A stretch of DNA of 64,000 bases from Podarcis muralis. Lineage: Eukaryota. The notes below the pieces were generated by a model. That model had not been told where the DNA came from, ran no database searches, and worked only from the letters and a program-made list of their open reading frames with translations. Shown here piece by piece: positions 1 through 53,173 of the stretch. The position numbers and the translations under genes were made by a program. The DNA lies in NCBI RefSeq assembly GCF_964188315.1, contig NC_135663.1:37448001-37512000 (forward strand). The letters are read 5' to 3'. Each line of letters begins with the position of its first letter. Position 1 is the stretch's first letter.

Positions 1-1908
1 AAAAAGACGTTGGCAATCCCACCTCCGATTGAACCCAATATGTGACTTTGGCTTTAGGCACAATCTTTGGAACATAGCCCCCACGTAAGTTGTGGGGCTT
101 ACTGTAATGTGTTTTACTATTTTTACATGCTGCTTTGGATATTGCACAAGAGAAAATTTTCAGTATGTGATATAGGAAAAAGCAGAGAACACTCATCCTT
201 TAGGGCTTTGATGTAACCATTTGTATGCTTGACTTGAGAAATAAGGACAAGCAAATGTATTTGCAATAGGACTATCAGAGTTAGCCATTATAGCCCCATC
301 AGCACTATGCATTTGAAGTAGTATTATGCCACTTTAAACAGTCGCAGCTCCCTCCCCCAAAGCATTCTGGGAGCTGTAGTTTGTTAAGGGTGCTGAGAGT
401 TGTTAGGAACCCCATTCCACTCACAAAGCTACAATTCTCAGATTTCATAATTAATCCCACTTCCCAGGGACCTCTTTCTTTACTTATATTCAGACATGAC
501 ATGAAATATTCTGGACCCCACCCAGAAATTGTACATAGTTCAATCCGGCATAATGCCACTTAACTGCTAAATATTAAGATTTATGACTATGTGATGTTTA
601 TTTCTAAATCATTATTATCAGGCTCCAAGAACATGGATTCATCTCTCCCTGCCCCCAGTCTAAAATAAAAAAGCAAGTCAGTTCTTCCTTGGAAGAGAAA
701 GAAACTAGCTGTTTCATAAGATTGTAGTCTAAAGGGGGGGGGGTTAAAATGAAGAGCACTTCCAATAGAACTGTCATTTTTCAATTGAAAATTGTTTGCT
801 TCTTTAACCACATTTTCTCATCACTGGCAGTTCTAACATATCTTCTCCCTCCCAAGAACTGACTGGCAGTGTTTAAAGGGCAGTGACCCTGGATTGCTCT
901 TGCTCACAATAGGCATTCAGAGAGACACAGATATGACCAAGGACTTTTTTGTGCACCAGGCTGGCCAATCAAAATGCAGTAAAGAACAATAGTAACATTA
1001 AAATTAAATGGATGCTATCTCTTCTTGCCAGATATCTTTAATAGCAGGATTGCTTTAAGAAGAGAACATCTCATACAATAAAAAGAGTCATGGAAATACT
1101 ATACTATCCTGAGTCACCAAGAATATTTGGGGGAAGGTAGAATCTAATGACATGAATACTGTGATGATACAGTAAATAAAAGTGGTTTAAAAAATCACTC
1201 TAGTAACATTAATGGTCGAATACCTGGATACAGAATTATTAACTGAGCCCAATTATACTTCCACCAAACATACAAAACATAAATCTGTATCAGACAATTA
1301 ACAGAATCAATTAATAATAAGCAGAACTCTGAAGAACAGCAAAATAACAAGACATGTCCCATTTAGACGTTTGCTGAATTGCAATTTAAATGCTATGAGA
1401 GATCCAGTTAGTTGTTGCTAGTGTGTGGCAGGGAAAATTTTTGTTTCAAGTAGTATAAAGTGTCCCAAGTTCTAGTCTGTGGGTTGTATCCAACTAAATT
1501 ATACTCACGAGTAGACCCACTGAAATTAGCAGACCTACATTAGTCATGTCTGTTAGTTTTATTGGGTCTGCTCTTCCTAGGATTAACATTTGATACAATA
1601 CTGGAGCTGGAAGCCCTCTAGAACCAATGGACAAGAAGGGTGGGTCCACAGGAAAGAAGCTGCCTGTTATGGATGGGGCAAAGAGGAGAGAGGAATCATC
1701 ATCCTGTAGTAGACTATGTGCTCTGCATGCAGAAGGTCCAAGGCTCAAACACTGGCATTGGCAATTAAAAGGATCAGGTAGCACATGATGTGAAAGACCT
1801 CTGCAGTTCTAGATTAGGCAGATACGTAGCCCAACCTGGTATGAGGCAGCTTCATAGGAGTTATGGACAACACCCTACTTCTTCTCATAACTGACAGTCC
1901 AAGATATA

Positions 1909-3436
1909 CAGTGGTACCCCGCAAGACGAACGCCTCGCGAGACGAAAAACTCGCAAAACGAAAGGTTTTTTCGTTTTCGAGTTGCCTCGCAAGACGAATT
2001 TCCCTATGGGCTTGCTTCGCAAAACGAAGCGGGTCTTCTCTTTTGAAGCAAGGGGCGGCGGGGAGATCGCTTCTCCCCACCGCCCCTTGCTTCAAAAGAG
2101 GTCTGCCCCCGGACCTCTTTTGAAGCAAGGGGCTGCGGGGAGATCGCTTCTCCCGGTGCTCCGAAGCGGGGTGGGGGGGCGGGAACACTTGCCCCAGCCA
2201 CCGGGCTTCGTAGCGCTGCTGCGAAGCCGGGCGGGGGGCGGGAACACCTGCCCCAGCCACCCCGCTTCGGAACGCTGCTCCGAAGCGGGGTGGGGGGGGG
2301 GCGGGAACACTTGCCCCAGCCACCGGGCTTCGTAGCGCTGCTGCGAAGCCGGGCGGGGGGCGGGAACACCTGCCCCAGCCACCCCGCTTCGGAACGCTGC
2401 TCCGAAGCGGGGTGGGGGGGCGGGAACACCTGCCCCAGCCGCCGGGCTTCGTAGCGCTGCTGCGAAGCCGGGCAGGGGGCGGGAACACCTGCCCCAGCCA
2501 CCCCGCTTCGGAACGCTGCTCCAAAGCGGGGTGGGGAGGCGGGAACACTTGCCCCAGCCACCGGGCTTCGTAGCGCTGCTCCGAAGCGGGGTGGGGGGGC
2601 GGGAACACTTGCCCCAGCCGCCGGGCTTCGTAGCGCTGCTGCGAAGCCGGGCGGGGGGCGGGAACACCTGCCCCAGCCACCCCGCTTCGGAACGCTGCTC
2701 CGAAGCGGGGTGGGGGGGGCGGGAACACCTGCCCCAGCCGCCGGGCTTCGTAGCGCTGCTGCGAAGCCGGGTGGGGGGCGGGAACACCTGCCCCAGCCAC
2801 CCCGCTTCGGAACGCTGCTCCGAAGCGGGGTGGGGGGGACTTGAACACTTGCCCCAGCCACCGGGCTTCGTAGCGCTGCTGCGAAGCCGGGCGGGGGGCG
2901 GGAACACCTGCCCCAGCCACCCCGCTTCGGAACGCTGCTCCGAAGCGGGGTGGGGGGGGCGGGAACACCTGCCCCAGCCGCCGGGCTTCGTAGCGCTGCT
3001 GCGAAGCCGGGCGGGGGGGGGGGCGGGAACACCTTCTGAAGGCGGGCGGGGGGCGAAAGTCTTTGTCCCCCCTGCCTGCCTTCCCAGGGGCTTTTAAATC
3101 GCCCCGGACAGCGGAGAAGTCCTCCGCTGTCCCGGGGCGATTTTAAAATGCCGCCCGCCAGCATTTTAAGATCGCCCGGACAGCGGAGAAGTCCTCTGCT
3201 GTCCCAGGGTTTTTTAAAATGCTGGGGGTGGGAAGAAAAGCCCTTGTCCCCCCCCAGCCTTCAGAAGAGGTCCGGGGACAGTCTGTCCCCGGACCTGGTC
3301 TGAAGGCGGTTTCCCTAGGAACGCATTAATTGATTTTCAATGCATTCCTATGGGAAACCGTGCATCGCAAGACGAAAAAACCGCAAGACGAAGAGACTTG
3401 CGGAACGAATTAATTTCGTCTTGCGAGGCACCACTG
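1909..3436 (+). mobile_element. Tigger/pogo-like MITE (family A) with internal hairpin modules and tandem array
   Basis: TA|CAGTGGTACCCCGCAAGACGAA ... TTCGTCTTGCGAGGCACCACTG|TA. About 22-bp imperfect TIRs, TA target duplication, repeated subterminal CGCAAGACGAA motifs, no transposase. Confidence 0.9.
2157..3033. repeat. GC-rich tandem array, about 60-bp monomer and 120-bp dimer, about 14 monomers
   Basis: Constant linker GGGGCGGGAACAC(C/T)TGCCCCAG alternates with hairpin A (CCACCGGGCTTCGTAGCGCTGCTGCGAAGCCGGGCGG) and hairpin B (CCACCCCGCTTCGGAACGCTGCTCCGAAGCGGGGTGG). Confidence 0.95.
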
Positions 3437-12646: not shown

Positions 12647-13261
12647 CAGTGGTACCCCGCAAGACGAACGCCTCAGAAGACGAAAAACTTGCTAGACGAA
12701 GGAGTTTTTCGTTTTCTTAGCCACTTCGCAAGACGCATTTCCCTATGGGCTTGCTTCGCAAAACGAAGCTTGCCCCGCAAGCTCCGGGGATAGCGGGGAA
12801 GCGCAGCGCGTCTTCCCCGCTGTCCCCGGACCTCTTTTGAAGCAAGGGGCGGCGGGGAGAAGATCACTTCTCCCCGTTGCCAGCCCCTCTCTCCCCGGAC
12901 CCCTTTTGAACCAAGGGGCGGCAACGGGGAGAAGCGATTCTCCCCGCTGCCCCTTCCCTTGCTTTAAAACAGGTCCGGGGACAGAGGGGAAGGCGCGCGC
13001 GCCTTCCCCTCTGTCCCCGGAGATTGCGGTGCAGGCAACGGGGAGAAGCAATCTTCTCCCCGCTGCCCCTTGCTTTAAACAGGTCCGGGGGCAGAGGGGA
13101 AGGCACGCACGCCTTCCCCTCTGTCCCCGGACGGTCTCCATAGGAACGCATTGATTGATTTTCAATGCATTCCTATGGGAAACCGTGCTTCGCAAGACGA
13201 AAAACTCGCAAGAAGAAAAAACTTGCGGAACGAATTAATTTCGTCTTGCGAGGCACCACTG
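12647..13261 (+). mobile_element. Family A Tigger-like MITE, second copy, different hairpin-rich interior
   Basis: Same TIRs and subterminal regions as 1909-3436, TA flanks. Interior has inverted repeats including a perfect 46-bp palindrome at 12975-13020. Confidence 0.9.
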
Positions 13262-23097: not shown

Positions 23098-23238
23098 NNN
23101 NNNNNNNNNNNNNNNNNNNNNNNNNNNNNNNNNNNNNNNNNNNNNNNNNNNNNNNNNNNNNNNNNNNNNNNNNNNNNNNNNNNNNNNNNNNNNNNNNNNN
23201 NNNNNNNNNNNNNNNNNNNNNNNNNNNNNNNNNNNNNN
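23098..23238. other. Assembly gap (141 N)
   Basis: Run of N. Confidence 1.
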
Positions 23239-24188: not shown

Positions 24189-24459
24189 CAGTGGTGCCTC
24201 GCAAGACAAAATTAATCCGTTCCGCGAGTCTCTTCGTCTTGCGGTTTTGTCGTCTTGCGAAGCACGGCTATTAGCGGCTTAGCGGCTATTAACGGCTTTA
24301 AGAAAAAGGAAACAAACTCGCAAGAACTCGCAAGACGTTTCGTCTTGCGAAGGAAGCCCATAGGGAAATTCGTCTTGCGGAACGACTCAAAAAACGGAAA
24401 ACCCTTTCGTCTAGTGAGTTTTTCGTCTTGCGAGGCATTCGTCTTGCAGGGCACCACTG
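24189..24459 (-). mobile_element. Family A Tigger-like MITE, short inverted copy without hairpin cargo
   Basis: TA|CAGTGGTGCCTCGCAAGAC ... GTCTTGCAGGGCACCACTG|TA. Same ends, short unrelated interior. Confidence 0.85.
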
Positions 24460-31379: not shown

Positions 31380-34300
31380 AACTAGCTTTTTAGGATAGGG
31401 AAACCTCAATATTCCAAAACCGAATCCACTAACGCGAGGGCGATTAGAAGGTGATGCGGGGGGGGGTGAGCTTAGAACAGTGCCGGGAGGGGCCCAATAG
31501 GGCGCCCTTCTCCCTCGGCTTTGCGCGGCAAGAGAAAGGAGCAACGTTGGTGCGCGCGATCCCTCCGGTGCCATTGGTGTCCCCACCTCTGCTACGGTTC
31601 ATGCGTGGCAGGCTGCTAGTGTGTGCTTGGGAGGGGAGGGGAGGGAAGAAGGCAGAGAGAAAGGATGAGGGCGGGAAGAAAAGTGGGAGGGGGAGGTCAG
31701 TCCTCTCTCCAAGACCCTTCCCCTGATAAACTATCGGAAAATTATGTATCTGTGGAGAGAGGGAAGTAATCGATCGCGCTCTTTTGTCTGAGGCTAGAGG
31801 AAAGGCGGCGGGGAGCCACCCCCACCCCCGCACACAAAAACACGCGCAAGGCACACACGCCATCCACGACAACCTTAGCCCTCTCTCCCTCTCCCTCCCT
31901 CCCCAGTGAACTTCAGGTGACCGACCATGGCTTTGACACATAAGCAGTTCAGCCCCGCCGACACTGAACCCGGGGGCAGAGCCAGGGAGGGGCCGGGCAA
32001 GCAAGCGGCGAGCAGAAGTGCCGGAGGCAGAGCGCAGGAAAATGACCCCTAAATCCACCCACGCCGCCCCCTCCGCCGCCGCCTTCCTTCCTCCTTTCTT
32101 TAGAGACACCAAGCCAACGCGAAGGCTTTTTTTTTTTTAAGACAAGACATATTATTTCTATATGTGTGTCCCCGCACACAAAACACACTTTTATTTCCTC
32201 CTCCTTCCAAGAGCGCCCGATCGCTTCTTGCTACCACAGGGAACCAGAAGAAAAAGTTAACTGCTTTGCAAAGAATTGAGGAGGAGGAGGAAAAATCGGG
32301 GGGGGGGGGAGCGGCGGGTTGGAGGTGGAAGAGGAAGAAGCGGGGTGGGAAAGGAGGGAGAGCGCGGGGTGAGCGGCTGTGTCAATGTGTGGTGTGTGCA
32401 TTGCCTGCAGGCTGTGGGAGGAGGAGGAGGAGGGCACTTTTCCGAGTCCTTCCTGCGCTCTGCTGCTCTGGTCTGGGGCAGCGGCGGCGCTGAAGCCTCC
32501 GACTCGCCCAGGCTCCATCTGACCCTGCATTTTATTGCAGCCGCGAGGAGAAGCCCCGAGCTCGCTTGCCGCCGCCGCCGCTCTGCAGGGACCTCGCATG
32601 CCACGATCTGCCTCCCGTGCCGTCCCCCACCCCCCAATATCATGCTCGCTTCTCCTCGGCGGCAGCGAAGCAGCAGCCCCGGATTCTCTCGTGTGTGTCT
32701 CTCTCGCTGTGTGTCCCCCCCCCCCCAACAACGCCGCCGCCACCCGCGCCGCTCCCTCCCTCGCCCTCCCCCGCCGCTCTTCGCCTCCTCCTCCCCGGCT
32801 CCGGGGCCGGCGAGCCCAGCCGCAACCTTTAGCCGGAGACGGACCTCGCGATTGATTCCGCGCAAGGCGCCAGCGAACCGCTTTCGTTTCCAATTGTGCA
32901 ACTCCCCACCCCAATAAGAATAACAGTAATAATAATAATAAAAAGAAGCCTCTTCCTTCCCCCCCCCCAACACATACACACACACATACACACACCCCAG
33001 CCATAAAGAGAGAAATCCATTCACACACAAATGCACAATCACAAGAAAGGGGAGGGAAGAGAGGACGAATAGAGCGAAGAAAGAGAGGGGAGGGAGGGAG
33101 AGGGGAGACACACACACACTCGCTCTCTCCGGCTCGCTCTCTCCCTCGCACACACACATACACACGCGCGCACACATGGAGGGGGAAAGAGGAAAAAAAT
33201 TAAAAGGGCACAAGGCTGTTCATCACCAACATGGCTGCCTTAGCTCAGACCTAAAAGAGGAATAACCCAGGCTGTGTCTTTGTCAGTTTCACCTCTGTAA
33301 CCCTAAACTAATGCACAAAACAACGGAGGAGGCTGCGGAGGGGAAGGAGGCAGGCAGAGACCGGGGGGTGGGGTGGGGGGAGAGAGAAAGAGAGAGGGGG
33401 CGAAGGAGAGAAGGGGGAAATGGGGGGGAGGGAGAGAGGGAGAGAAAAAAAAGGAGCACTTACGTGAAGAGAGGCGCTTGGGTTGCTCCTGCTTCCTCCT
33501 GGGCATTTTCCCCCCTTTTCACATTCTCCTCCTTGGTTTAATGGGGGATCAAATATATATTTTTTAAAAAGCCCAAAAGTGGGGCAGAGGCAGGCACAAA
33601 GCAGGGGCAAAGGGTGGCTGCCCAGCAAGGGCTGGTTTTCTTCTCCTGGGCAATGGGGGTGGGGGGGTTGAGAAGCTGCTTTTCCTGGAGCCAAGGAGAA
33701 GAGCCCCCCCGCCTCGCCTCTCTCCCCTTTTTCTTGCCCTTCCTCCCCCACCTTTTCTCTCTCTCTCTTCTTCTCTCCCCCCCTCCCCTCCCCTCCCCCG
33801 GTCGTGCACCTGGCTTGTCCCCGGTCGCAATATTCTTCAATAGAAATGGATCTAATGGGCGAGGGAGAGTGTGTGCTCATATGCGGTGTCAATAATGAGG
33901 GCTGGTGCGGCGGTGTCTATGGCTGCTCCCTGTGTGTCTCCAAGCCCCTAACTAACACTAATGCAGGGATCAAAGGGCAGCGGCGGCGGCGGCAGCAGTG
34001 CTCACAGCTCACACACAGGCTGGAGAAGGAGAGAGAGGCAGAGAGGCAGAGAGAGGAGACGAGACACACACGCACACACACACACGCACACAAGGCAGAG
34101 CAAAGAGGAAGGTGCCCCCAGGCTCCTAGGCTGTACTTTACGCACACACCGAATCGCGAGCGCTCCTCGTAGCGAGGTTCAAGGGGGGACAAAGGGGGCA
34201 GCCCCAGCAGGATGCAGCCCCATTTTCCTCTCAAAGACGGAGGGGGTGGGCAGGGGAAGTTTGGAGTTCTCCACATTAGCCGCGTTGATTGTTAAAATAA
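31380..34300. promoter_or_regulatory. CpG island, ZNF827 promoter, 5'UTR and proximal intron
   Basis: High GC with abundant undepleted CpG, CGG/GCG runs and GA/CT/CA tracts, against CpG-depleted flanks. Contains the first coding exon. Boundaries approximate. Confidence 0.85.
33464..33506 (-). CDS. ZNF827: ZNF827 first coding exon (43 nt, phase-1 donor), encoding the N-terminal NuRD-binding-type motif MPRRKQEQPKRL
   Basis: Minus strand reads AAA ATG CCC AGG AGG AAG CAG GAG CAA CCC AAG CGC CTC TCT TCA C|GTAAGT. The peptide matches the ZNF827 N-terminus as I recall it (human MPRRKQEQPKRLPSH). There is a consensus donor (plus strand ACTTAC 33458-33463) and the exon lies in a CpG island. Confidence 0.9.
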
Positions 34301-41744: not shown

Positions 41745-42037
41745 TGTTATGTACTGAAGTTCTCACCCTGGGCCAGCAGGGGGATATTGTAGATAGTTAT
41801 GCAAATGAAGGATTGAAAGTGACGTTCAGTGATTGGATAGTTTGTATGCAAATGAAGGATCGAAAGTGACGTTCAGTGATTGGCTAGTTACAGAAAATGG
41901 TTACTGTTGCATTCTAGTGGAGCTCTATATAAGCAGGCTGACTGAGCTCCTCAGTTCAGTTCTGTTCCAGCTTACAAATAAAGAGCTGCTTTGGAAGAAT
42001 CGCTGTGTCGTCTGATATGTTCGCCCACAACTTAACA
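41745..42037 (+). mobile_element. Solo LTR (293 bp)
   Basis: TGTTA...TAACA termini, 5-bp TSD GGCAC, TATATAA 41926-41932, AATAAA 41977-41982, 47-bp internal duplication. Confidence 0.9.
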
Positions 42038-51592: not shown

Positions 51593-53173
51593 CAGGGCCT
51601 CCGAGAGGAATTTTATCAAGAAATGTCTCTTTTGGTCCCCTTACCTTCTCCATTGGTTATACTGTAAGGTCAAAAAGGGTATGGAAGACAAGAGATGGGC
51701 TGAGTGGAGCACTCTGTTATTATTCTGCATGTAAGGCCTTATGCTCTTATACTTCCTCCATGATAAATATAAATAAAATAAAAGAGGATCAGAGATAAGA
51801 AAGCACATTTGATTGGAACATCTTTGATTATGCTACAATACAGATAAGGCAAAATAACTCACATTGAAACATCCCTTTATATTGCAATGCAGATCAGATC
51901 ACCAGAAGACATTAGTGTTAGTAAAGAAAGGAAGAAAAACGTACCATGTGCTTTTTAAAAATAGCTTTTCTTGACTTTTGTGAAAAATTTCAAATCACAG
52001 CATGAAAATTAATTGTTATGGCAATGTTTGATTCAAAACTTAGCCTGGCCAAATTCACAAGATGTTTCTGAGACATTGTAGACCTTAAATAATTATTAAT
52101 TAGCTGAAGTTTGCTGAGTGACCTCTCTCCAGAAGCTACTGTTGCTGGAATTGTTAATAGTACTCTTAAGCTAGCACACACATTTGGAAACAGGTCACCA
52201 AGTCTGTACTTTCTTAACAAGTTCAACAGACCTAATGGCTTAAACTGTACATTTACAAAATCTGCTCCGTGTACTGAGGCTAAATGTTGCATTTCTTTTC
52301 CAAAATCATCACCAATTAAAATCAGCAGGATATTGCTATGATAAAGATAAAGGTTTTCTCTCCACTTCACTTTCAGACATGGTGAGATATTTCCACAAGA
52401 AAGCATTTTTTGTGCAAATTGCTTAACAGCATTGAAGTGGACAGTTAACCCTGCTATAACATTGTCTACCAAAACCTAAAACACACACTTTCTGAAGTGG
52501 GTCTCTTCTGGAGTATCATCTGTGTCATTCATTTCTTCCAAGTTAGCATCAGGTGTGCTGTTGTCATGTGACCTTGTCCTCTTGCACCTAATTTAATTAC
52601 ATACACGGGACAGAGTTTTATTTCTATATTTAGGTCTGATGCAACCAATCTGGCTTCATTCCACATGCATTTCCGCTTCTTTTGAAGTTTTGTCAGCTCT
52701 GCTACATCAACATCCAGTGTGGCATCTCTAGCTTGAAAGACCTTGTTTCAAATATCTATGCCAGCTAATGTTTTGTACCACATGGCTGACACTAACACAC
52801 AGGCAAAAGATGTCACATATAATAAAACTCCATGGACTTCATTTCTTGTTTTGGCCATCAAATTTAGTTCTAGGAGGTCTTCCAGTGCTAATGTAATACC
52901 AGGCAAGTGATCTGCAAAATTCAACATTCAGCAGGATTTGAGCATCTTGTTTCAGACATACTATGAAGAGAACAACCAATATAGTTTTTGTAGTATTTCC
53001 TACCACTTAGGACTGGAACTGAACAGGTGGGACACAGTTTTAATTGTTCCAAAAAAAGGGTTATTGCTTCAGTTATGCATTCAGCAGCAGCATTTCTACA
53101 TAAGTTGAGTGTGTGACAACCACAAGGTGAAAAAAATTGCTTTTGAGTATTTTTATTGTATTTCTGCTTGTGC

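What the first reader, a model, noticed from the sequence alone, without database searches (positions are those of the whole stretch)
2157..3033. Alternating two-hairpin satellite with compensatory base changes, carried inside a DNA-transposon MITE
Seen: about 14 monomers of about 60 bp, each a constant linker plus a 37-nt hairpin, alternating A and B. B is a perfect 15-bp stem with a 7-nt loop. A is an 11-bp stem with one G.T pair and a 3-nt loop. A and B align without gaps, and several of their 7 differences fall on paired positions: 7/31 is G-C in A and C-G in B; 14/24 is T.G versus G-C; in the GCCGCC variants 3/35 is G-C versus A-T. The array sits inside a TA-flanked Tigger-like MITE. Inference: covariation suggests the stem-loop is maintained at ssDNA or RNA level, either by selection or by arm-to-arm template switching. 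This would be a mobile carrier that seeds structured satellites. I do not know of a description of this array.
Basis: partly seen in the sequence, partly recalled or inferred. Interest (0 to 1): 0.72.

Follow-up and report, generated by a model that had tools for sequence, protein, structure and literature searches.

The report
Hairpin repeat array inside lizard transposon
A small non-coding cut-and-paste transposon in a wall-lizard genome carries 14 tandem copies of a 60-base GC-rich hairpin unit. The array is real, but it is a known kind of repeat-carrying transposon, and its few "compensating" base changes need no selection on an RNA fold.

Summary
Window 2157-3023 is a 14-unit array of 59-64 bp units. 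It lies inside a 1,528-bp TA-flanked element (1909-3436) with 22-bp Tigger-type terminal inverted repeats.

Hairpins A and B are as described, with three corrections:
- Unit 7 is an A-left/B-right chimera with three mismatches.
- Pair 6/32 is a G.G mismatch in every A unit.
- Pair 3/35 occurs in all four states (G-C, G.T, A.C, A-T), as expected from CpG decay.

Only three pairs co-vary. Each is one old event copied six or seven times by 120/240-bp block duplication. The count of such pairs is reached by 126 of 500 shuffles, and RNAalifold's covariation term is -0.52 of -40.25 kcal/mol. Every young private substitution weakens or breaks a pair and none is compensated. A second hairpin register folds nearly as well, and the whole array folds as one nested palindrome.

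Best reading: tandem expansion of a palindromic module inside a Tigger-like MITE, with arm-to-arm templated copying plus CpG decay producing the apparent compensation.

Two more copies of the family lie in this window, each with a different interior. Earlier notes of this scan report the family many times on other DNA of this genome.

Repeat-carrying MITEs are already described (DTC84, Tetris). No reads could be examined, so assembly and expression remain untested.

The parts
1907..1908 (.). Left TA target-site duplication
   Evidence: Sequence read. The same TA flanks copies 2 and 3.
1909..1930 (+). Left terminal inverted repeat, CAGTGGTACCCCGCAAGACGAA
   Evidence: 6 matches in the window against 0 expected. 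They pair up into three elements.
1919..2028 (+). Five subterminal copies of the TCGCAAGACGAA motif at the left end. They are likely transposase-binding sites (inference).
   Evidence: 20 matches in the window against 0.04 expected, all inside the three MITE copies.
2038..2154 (.). Left interior GC-rich palindromic modules: a 29-bp-arm hairpin at 2038-2100 and a 43-nt inverted pair at 2061-2154. They are shared with copy 2.
   Evidence: I1, I2. Blast matches to 12829-12985.
2157..3023 (+). Tandem array of 14 units of 59-64 bp. Unit order: A B A B Ag B X Ag B Ag B A B Ag, where X is the chimera.
2176..2195 (+). Linker mini-hairpin GGGGCGGG-AACA-CYTGCCCC (8 bp, with one or two G.T pairs). This is the first of 14.
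   Evidence: helix 1, 94.4% of cells paired.
2198..2234 (+). Hairpin A, first of 7. The others start at 2320, 2439, 2618, 2738, 2858 and 2978. The CCGCC ('Ag') variants are at 2439, 2618, 2738 and 2978.
   Evidence: -13.2 to -18.4 kcal/mol with DNA parameters.
2257..2293 (+). Hairpin B, first of 6. The others start at 2379, 2498, 2677, 2797 and 2917. Perfect 15-bp stem and 7-nt loop.
   Evidence: -19.5 kcal/mol. Unit u06 is -13.9 because of a C.A mismatch.
2558..2594 (+). Chimeric hairpin u07: A left arm and B right arm, with mismatches at 6/32, 7/31 and 14/24. It marks a register slip or unequal exchange.
   Evidence: (-11.3 kcal/mol).
2838..2842 (+). Clustered change GCGGG to GACTT in one linker. 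It creates an ACTTG direct repeat and destroys that mini-hairpin.
   Evidence: u12, columns 4-7.
3036..3085 (+). Flanking hairpin module. Its left arm plus G-run matches the A right arm plus linker at 17 of 18 bases. It is the only relative of the array unit in the window.
   Evidence: dimer 4-21 against the right flank, 94.4%, E = 1.4e-4.
3092..3356 (.). Right interior palindromic modules: 3092-3147, 3164-3218, 3257-3307 and 3310-3356.
3365..3426 (.). Three subterminal TCGCAAGACGAA motif copies at the right end.
3415..3436 (-). Right terminal inverted repeat, CAGTGGTGCCTCGCAAGACGAA
3437..3438 (.). Right TA target-site duplication
12647..13261 (+). Second family copy (615 bp). Same ends and TA flanks. 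The hairpin cargo is different and includes a 110-bp unit in 1.9 tandem copies. No A/B units.
24189..24459 (-). Third family copy (271 bp), in inverted orientation, TA-flanked, with no GC-rich cargo.

Best explanation
This is one copy of a non-autonomous Tigger-type (pogo superfamily) cut-and-paste transposon. It has 22-bp inverted ends, TA target duplications and repeated subterminal TCGCAAGACGAA motifs.

**How the array arose (inferred).**
- In this copy, one roughly 60-bp quasi-palindromic module was amplified in tandem. The module is an 8-bp linker mini-hairpin plus a 37-nt hairpin.
- Amplification went by duplication of 120- and 240-bp blocks, through replication slippage or unequal exchange.
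- Hairpin formation and the slippery poly-G runs would favour both processes.

**How A and B came to differ (inferred).**
- A and B differ by 7 substitutions that predate the amplification.
- Co-change at 7/31 and 14/24 is best explained by DNA-level arm-to-arm templated copying, that is template switching or quasi-palindrome correction.
- Co-change at 3/35 is symmetric CpG decay. In a stem holding paired CpGs, half of double decays give A-T pairs without any selection.

**What is shown and what is inferred.**
- Shown: the anatomy, the unit order, the pair counts, the alternative fold registers and the TIR similarity.
- Inferred: the slippage and template-switch steps, and the order of events.
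For: - **Element boundaries.**: three TA-flanked copies with the same ends and different interiors.
- **Subterminal motif.**: the motif occurs only in these copies.
- **Family assignment.**: the first 15 bases of the right TIR, CAGTGGTGCCTCGCA, are identical to a listed Tigger TIR. Other listed Tigger TIRs begin CAGTGGTACCTCG.
- **Block structure.**: period 120 fits better than 59 (92% against 83% matches). The block A(T) B Ag(C) B recurs, there is one chimera, and poly-G length varies.
- **Covariation.**: 3 co-varying pairs, reached by 126 of 500 shuffles; covariation term -0.52 kcal/mol.
- **CpG decay.**: 3/35 is present in all four states, and 6/32 is broken in all A units.
- **Recent changes.** Private changes in u05, u06, u07 and u12 break pairs. 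The one in u10 turns a G-C pair into a G.T wobble. None is compensated.
- **Alternative folds.**: the arm-linker-arm register folds at -10 to -21 kcal/mol; the minimum-energy fold is a nested long-range palindrome.
- **Same tendency in copy 2.**: copy 2 has begun its own tandem duplication.
- **Mechanism and kind in the literature.** PMC8794818 shows that template switching creates and repairs stems, including multibase compensatory changes. PMC3879986 describes MITEs with core-repeat arrays that have a palindrome at each junction.
Against: - Two co-changed, still-pairing positions among 7 substitutions are unlikely under independent point mutation (p about 0.011). Some pairing-aware process did act, and selection is not excluded.
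- As RNA the + strand folds better than the - strand (-711.6 against -633.3 kcal/mol).
- CpG observed/expected is 0.77 in the array against 0.11-0.18 in the flanks. This fits youth but also protection from methylation.
- No other genomic copy of the A/B unit and no reads could be examined. The order of events and in-situ expansion are therefore inferred.
Confidence: 0.7

Rival explanations
1. The hairpins are kept by selection. The selection would act either on the transposon (a folded single-stranded or cruciform interior that helps bring the ends together for transposition) or on a transcript (hairpin precursors of small RNAs).
For: - Co-changed pairs 7/31 and 14/24 (p about 0.011).
- The + strand folds better as RNA.
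- All three family copies are CpG-rich, and the two long ones are packed with palindromes.
- First-reader notes on other windows report similar 'compensatory' patterns in this family. These are unchecked.
Against: - Only three events support it, and one is CpG decay with its intermediates still present.
- Pair 6/32 is broken in every A unit.
- The chimera and all private mutations are tolerated.
- The third copy has no GC-rich cargo yet keeps intact ends, so the cargo is not required for insertion.
- No Rfam family reaches its gathering score. Both strands give only generic sub-threshold miRNA-like matches.
- Counted by events, G.T and A.C oppositions are equal, about 4 each.
Confidence: 0.12
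2. Pure chance. A and B diverged by independent point mutations and CpG decay, with no pairing-aware mechanism. The apparent compensation is a coincidence multiplied by tandem duplication.
For: -: the number of co-varying pairs is reached in 126 of 500 shuffles.
- Once both sides of a pair have changed, 4 of the 9 possible outcomes still pair when wobble is counted.
- Keeping 13 or more of 15 pairs after 7 random hits has p of about 0.087.
Against: - Two double-hit pairs among 7 substitutions have p of about 0.011.
- Both involve transversions, which are rarer.
Confidence: 0.12
3. Assembly artefact. The array length or unit order is a product of misassembly of a repetitive, GC-rich stretch.
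For: - GC content of 75% and near-identical units are hard to assemble.
Against: - The units carry a heterogeneous, ordered set of private variants, different poly-G lengths and one chimera. A collapsed or artificially duplicated array would not look like this.
- The ends join cleanly to unique MITE flanks and an intact TSD.
Confidence: 0.04

Closest known systems
Tandem-repeat-containing MITEs (DTC84 of the clam Donax trunculus and pearl-like elements; PMC3879986)
   Same: - Conserved flanking 'cassette' with inverted repeats around a central array of core repeats.
- Ordered repeat variants.
- A palindrome at each repeat junction, proposed as the hotspot for copy-number change.
- Every copy is different.
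   Different: - Unrelated sequence and host (mollusc).
- The putative TSD is AA, not TA.
- The repeats are about 160 bp and not built almost wholly of hairpins.
- There are up to five repeats, against 14 here.
Tigger family of pogo transposons (TIR table in the PMC9219625 supplement)
   Same: - TA target duplication.
- TIR of 22-23 bp that begins CAGTGGTRCCTCG.
- The first 15 bases of the right TIR are identical to a listed bee Tigger TIR, and 19 of 22 bases agree overall.
   Different: - No transposase gene is present here.
- The autonomous partner was not identified.
- The lizard and snake entries in that table have other TIR continuations.
Foldback transposons that seed satellites (Tetris of Drosophila virilis; PMC4079207)
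   Same: DNA transposon whose internal tandem repeats can fold back and can give rise to satellite arrays.
   Different: - In foldback elements the long inverted ends are themselves made of tandem repeats in opposite orientation.
- Here all 14 units, and their asymmetric linker, lie in one orientation between short 22-bp TIRs.
Template-switch (quasi-palindrome) mutations that create and repair stems (PMC8794818, PMC5453318)
   Same: A DNA-replication mechanism that yields multibase, apparently compensatory changes in hairpin arms without selection.
   Different: - It was shown for rRNA genes and human mutation clusters.
- Here it is inferred, not reconstructed. No outgroup copy was available to polarise the changes.

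Membership tests
Tigger-type (pogo superfamily) non-autonomous element / MITE | TA target-site duplication | tested here: met
   TA lies on both sides of all three copies.
Tigger-type (pogo superfamily) non-autonomous element / MITE | Short TIRs resembling those of Tigger transposons | tested here: met
   The two TIRs agree at 20 of 22 bases. CAGTGGTGCCTCGCA is identical to the listed Colletes gigas Tigger TIR. The Mesobuthus Tigger TIR in the same table begins CAGTGGTACCTCG (PMC9219625 supplement file 6).
Tigger-type (pogo superfamily) non-autonomous element / MITE | No coding capacity | tested here: met
   The open frames across the array are repeat translations. No Pfam family is above its cut-off, and there are no protein relatives.
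Tigger-type (pogo superfamily) non-autonomous element / MITE | Autonomous partner with the same ends that encodes a DDE/CENP-B-type transposase | not testable with these tools
   None is present in the window. No lizard genome database was at hand.
Passer family (the label used by earlier agents of this scan) | TIRs like those of Passer elements of lacertids | tested here: not met
   Passer entries for Podarcis muralis, Zootoca vivipara and Lacerta in the PMC9976928 supplement begin CCGTA.... This element begins CAGTGG.
Tandem-repeat-containing MITE (DTC84/pearl kind) | Central tandem array between conserved TIR-bearing flanks, with a palindrome at unit junctions | tested here: met
   This is an analogy of architecture, not homology.
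Foldback element | Long inverted termini composed of tandem sub-repeats in opposite orientation | tested here: not met
   All units and the asymmetric linker are in direct orientation. The array aligned to its own reverse complement gives at most 49% identity without gaps.
Structured RNA family (Rfam) | Match at or above a family's gathering score | tested here: not met
   The best match is 36 bits against a gathering score of 86. The matches are generic miRNA-precursor models, found on both strands.
Structured RNA or ssDNA element under selection | Significant covariation from independent events | tested here: inconclusive
   There are 3 co-varying pairs, reached by 126 of 500 shuffles. The covariation term is -0.52 kcal/mol. 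Only one array with about three independent hairpin types was available.
Satellite DNA | Long arrays that exist independently of the carrier element | tested here: not met
   The monomer is found nowhere else in the 64-kb window. Genome-wide status is not testable here.

The most novel reading that the evidence does not exclude
The Tigger-like MITE family of this wall lizard is under transposon-level selection for a foldable interior. Hairpin cargo would then be actively generated and repaired because a folded single strand or cruciform helps synapsis of the ends, or helps escape from silencing. The A/B co-changes would be true compensatory evolution in a DNA (not RNA) structure.
Probability: 0.08. 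Interest if true: 0.6.

Novelty: new member of a known kind. Interest (0 to 1): 0.25.

Why it matters
**As it stands.** This is a tidy vertebrate example of a repeat-breeding MITE. It shows a GC-rich, CpG-rich palindromic minisatellite being grown inside a transposon cassette.

**Methodological lesson.** In CpG-rich palindromes carried in tandem arrays, apparent compensatory changes arise without selection in three ways:
- template switching between arms;
- symmetric CpG decay, where half of double decays restore a Watson-Crick pair;
- multiplication of one event by block duplication.

Covariation counted over array units must therefore not be read as evidence of a functional fold.

**If selection were shown.** If genome-wide data did show selection for pairing, the family would become a model for DNA-structure constraints on transposition.

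Tried and rejected
- **Sequencing reads.** Assembly, polymorphism and expression are untested.
- **Metagenome scan** for the hairpin core GCTTCGNANCGCTGCTSCGAAGC: two hits, both chance matches inside bacterial coding sequence and unrelated to the array.
- **Viral-contig scans** for the TIR and for the linker plus left arm: no hits.
- **Protein-word search** with the array's 271-aa open frame, as a trick to find other copies: 3,976 candidates, none significant.
- **Earlier findings by sequence:** blank.
- **Full-text search for the TIR strings:** only unrelated primer-like matches.
- **Rfam:** nothing near a gathering score.
- **Pfam on ORFs over the array and elsewhere:** only a hAT remnant, far from the array.
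- **Foldback-element reading:** rejected, because all units are in direct orientation.
- **'Passer' label:** rejected on TIR evidence.
- **Strand bias of G.T over A.C as an RNA signal:** rejected. There are 25 against 13 cells, but about 4 against 4 independent events.

Full report
**What is there.**
- Tandem Repeats Finder reports an array at 2157-3023 with period 59 (14.4 copies, 83% matches). A better period is 120 (7.2 copies, 92% matches).
- Anchoring on the invariant GAACAC gives 14 units of 59-64 bp. The length differences lie in a poly-G run.
- A gap-free 59-column alignment of the units has 93% mean column identity.
- Each unit has two parts. The first is a linker that is itself an 8-bp mini-hairpin (GGGGCGGG-AACA-CYTGCCCC, with one or two G.T pairs). 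The second is a 37-nt hairpin.
- Hairpin B has a perfect 15-bp stem and a 7-nt loop in five of six units (-19.5 kcal/mol, DNA parameters).
- Hairpin A has an 11-bp inner stem with one T.G pair and a 3-nt loop. A G.G mismatch and two to five outer pairs follow (-13.2 to -18.4 kcal/mol).
- A and B differ at positions 6, 7, 14, 16, 24, 31 and 35.
- The array as single-stranded DNA folds far better than shuffles (z = -25.7).

**Corrections to the description.**
- The unit order is A B A B Ag B X Ag B Ag B A B Ag. X (u07, 2558-2594) has the left arm of A and the right arm of B, so it has mismatches at 6/32, 7/31 and 14/24 (-11.3 kcal/mol).
- Seen in the other phase, X is simply two consecutive units of one type, the footprint of a register slip or unequal exchange.
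- Pair 6/32 is G.G in every A unit, so it is uncompensated.
- Pair 3/35 occurs as G-C (u05, u08, u14), G.T (u10), A.C (u01, u03, u12) and A-T (all B units and u07).
- Linker and arm variants recur as a four-unit block, A(T) B Ag(C) B (u03-u06, u12-u14, and a variant at u08-u11). The array therefore grew by duplication of 120- and 240-bp blocks.

**The carrier.**
- The array lies in a 1,528-bp element at 1909-3436. Its TIRs are CAGTGGTACCCCGCAAGACGAA and CAGTGGTGCCTCGCAAGACGAA, and TA lies on both sides.
- The motif TCGCAAGACGAA occurs 20 times in the window against 0.04 expected. All 20 are inside this element and two further TA-flanked copies.
- Copy 2 (12647-13261) has different palindromic cargo, including its own 110-bp unit in 1.9 tandem copies.
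- Copy 3 (24189-24459) is 271 bp, inverted, and has no GC-rich cargo.
- The A/B unit has no other copy in the window. Its only relative there is an 18-nt match, 17 of 18 bases, between the A right arm plus linker and the hairpin just 3' of the array.
- The element has no coding capacity.
- The TIR is of the Tigger type. The supplementary table of PMC9219625 lists Tigger TIRs CAGTGGTGCCTCGCATAAAGAAC and CAGTGGTACCTCGGTTCACGAAC, with TA duplications.
- Earlier agents of this scan called the family 'Passer'. The Passer entries for Podarcis, Zootoca and Lacerta in PMC9976928 begin CCGTA, so I do not adopt that label.

**Is the covariation evidence of a maintained structure?**
- That number of pairs is reached by 126 of 500 shuffles. 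The cell-based measures exceed all shuffles, but the tool warns that relatedness alone does this.
- RNAalifold recovers the same register, with a covariation term of -0.52 out of -40.25 kcal/mol.
- Each co-change is one old event, present in six or seven units because the AB dimer was the unit of amplification.
- A simulation of 7 random substitutions on B gives p of about 0.011 for two double-hit, still-pairing positions. It gives p of about 0.087 for keeping at least 13 of 15 pairs. Something pairing-aware probably acted, but the evidence is a single comparison.
- Pair 3/35 is a special case. Both sites are CpG transitions (CCGCC to CCACC, GGCGG to GGTGG). In a stem where a CpG pairs with a CpG, two of the four double-decay outcomes restore Watson-Crick pairs and one gives wobbles. 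All intermediates are still present in the array.
- Young private changes are u05 G-to-A, u06 G-to-A, u07 G-to-A, u10 C-to-T and the GCGGG-to-GACTT cluster in u12. Four break pairs and u10 turns a G-C pair into a G.T wobble. None is compensated.
- The u12 cluster creates an ACTTG direct repeat. It looks like a templated multi-base change, which suggests that templated mutation operates in this array.

**The hairpin register is not unique.**
- All arms are variants of one motif, CGAAGCSSGGYGG, and its complement. The units can therefore also fold as arm-linker-arm hairpins of 52-56 nt, at -10 to -21 kcal/mol.
- The minimum-energy fold of the whole array is a nested long-range palindrome, not a row of local hairpins.
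- As RNA, the + strand folds better than the - strand (-711.6 against -633.3 kcal/mol). G.T oppositions (25 cells) outnumber A.C (13 cells), but by independent events the count is about four each.
- No Rfam family comes near its gathering score. Both strands give generic miRNA-like sub-threshold matches, as any palindrome does.

**Most likely mechanism.**
- A palindromic module in the interior of a Tigger-like MITE was amplified by slippage or unequal exchange. Hairpins and poly-G runs favour both.
- The A/B differences arose earlier. They were partly copied from arm to arm by template switching or quasi-palindrome correction. That mechanism is shown to create and repair stems, including multibase compensatory changes (PMC8794818, PMC5453318).
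- CpG decay added the 3/35 pattern.
- The anatomy and the counts are shown. The mutational steps are inferred.
- CpG observed/expected is 0.77 in the array and 0.8-1.5 in the three copies, against 0.11-0.18 in the flanks and 0.32 in the window. This fits young insertions, but hypomethylation would fit as well.

**Comparison with what is known.**
- MITEs that carry and breed tandem repeats are described. DTC84 has a flanking cassette, ordered core-repeat variants and a palindrome at each junction, which is proposed as the hotspot for length change (PMC3879986).
- Tetris is a foldback transposon that provided the building blocks of a satellite (PMC4079207). Reviews cover the theme (PMC12628747, PMC9659126).
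- This array is a new member of that kind in a lizard. It is unusual in being almost all hairpin, and in being carried by a Tigger-type element.
- It is not a foldback element, because all units lie in one orientation.
- Notes of this scan report the same family, with various hairpin cargos, many times on other DNA of this genome. They include a first-reader note on a '120-bp array' with two alternating hairpins on another piece. I could not check these notes.

**Limits.**
Assembly correctness, polymorphism and expression are therefore untested.
- No lizard genome database was available. Scans of metagenome and viral collections, and a protein-word search with the array's open frame, found nothing related.
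- The N run at 23098-23238 was left alone.

Noticed in passing
window 2838-2851: In one unit the linker's left half reads GACTT instead of GCGGG. This makes a direct repeat ACTTG-AAC-ACTTG. It looks like a clustered templated mutation, and it destroys that unit's 8-bp mini-hairpin.
   Followed up: partly
window 2157-3033: A canonical G-quadruplex motif (four G3+ runs with loops of 1-7 nt) occurs 7 times on the + strand and never on the - strand. It lies at the B right arm plus poly-G (GGGGTGGGGGGGCGGG). The poly-G run is a constant 6 G after A hairpins, except 11 G after the last unit (u14), but 7-10 G after B hairpins.
   Followed up: partly
window 12920-13131: The second MITE copy carries its own 110-bp double-hairpin unit in 1.9 tandem copies (88% matches). 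This is an incipient array of a different module.
   Followed up: partly
window 1909-3436, 12647-13261, 24189-24459: All three MITE copies are CpG-rich islands (CpG observed/expected 0.84-1.53) in a CpG-depleted background (0.11-0.18 in the flanks, 0.32 in the window). Either the insertions are young or they escape methylation.
   Followed up: partly
window 31500-33000: A GC-rich, CpG-island-like stretch (GC up to 0.64, CpG observed/expected up to 1.05) with long open frames on both strands and no Pfam match. It may be a promoter or first exon of a host gene.
   Followed up: no
window 51990-52472 (-): An open frame with a hAT-family C-terminal dimerisation domain (Pfam PF05699, E = 8.7e-11). 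It is a hAT transposase remnant.
   Followed up: no
window 41798-41889: A 47-bp unit in two tandem copies (95% matches). Not examined.
   Followed up: no
literature (PMC9976928 and PMC9219625 supplements): Earlier agents' label 'Passer' for this MITE family conflicts with the published lacertid Passer TIRs, which begin CCGTA. The ends match published Tigger TIRs instead.
   Followed up: yes
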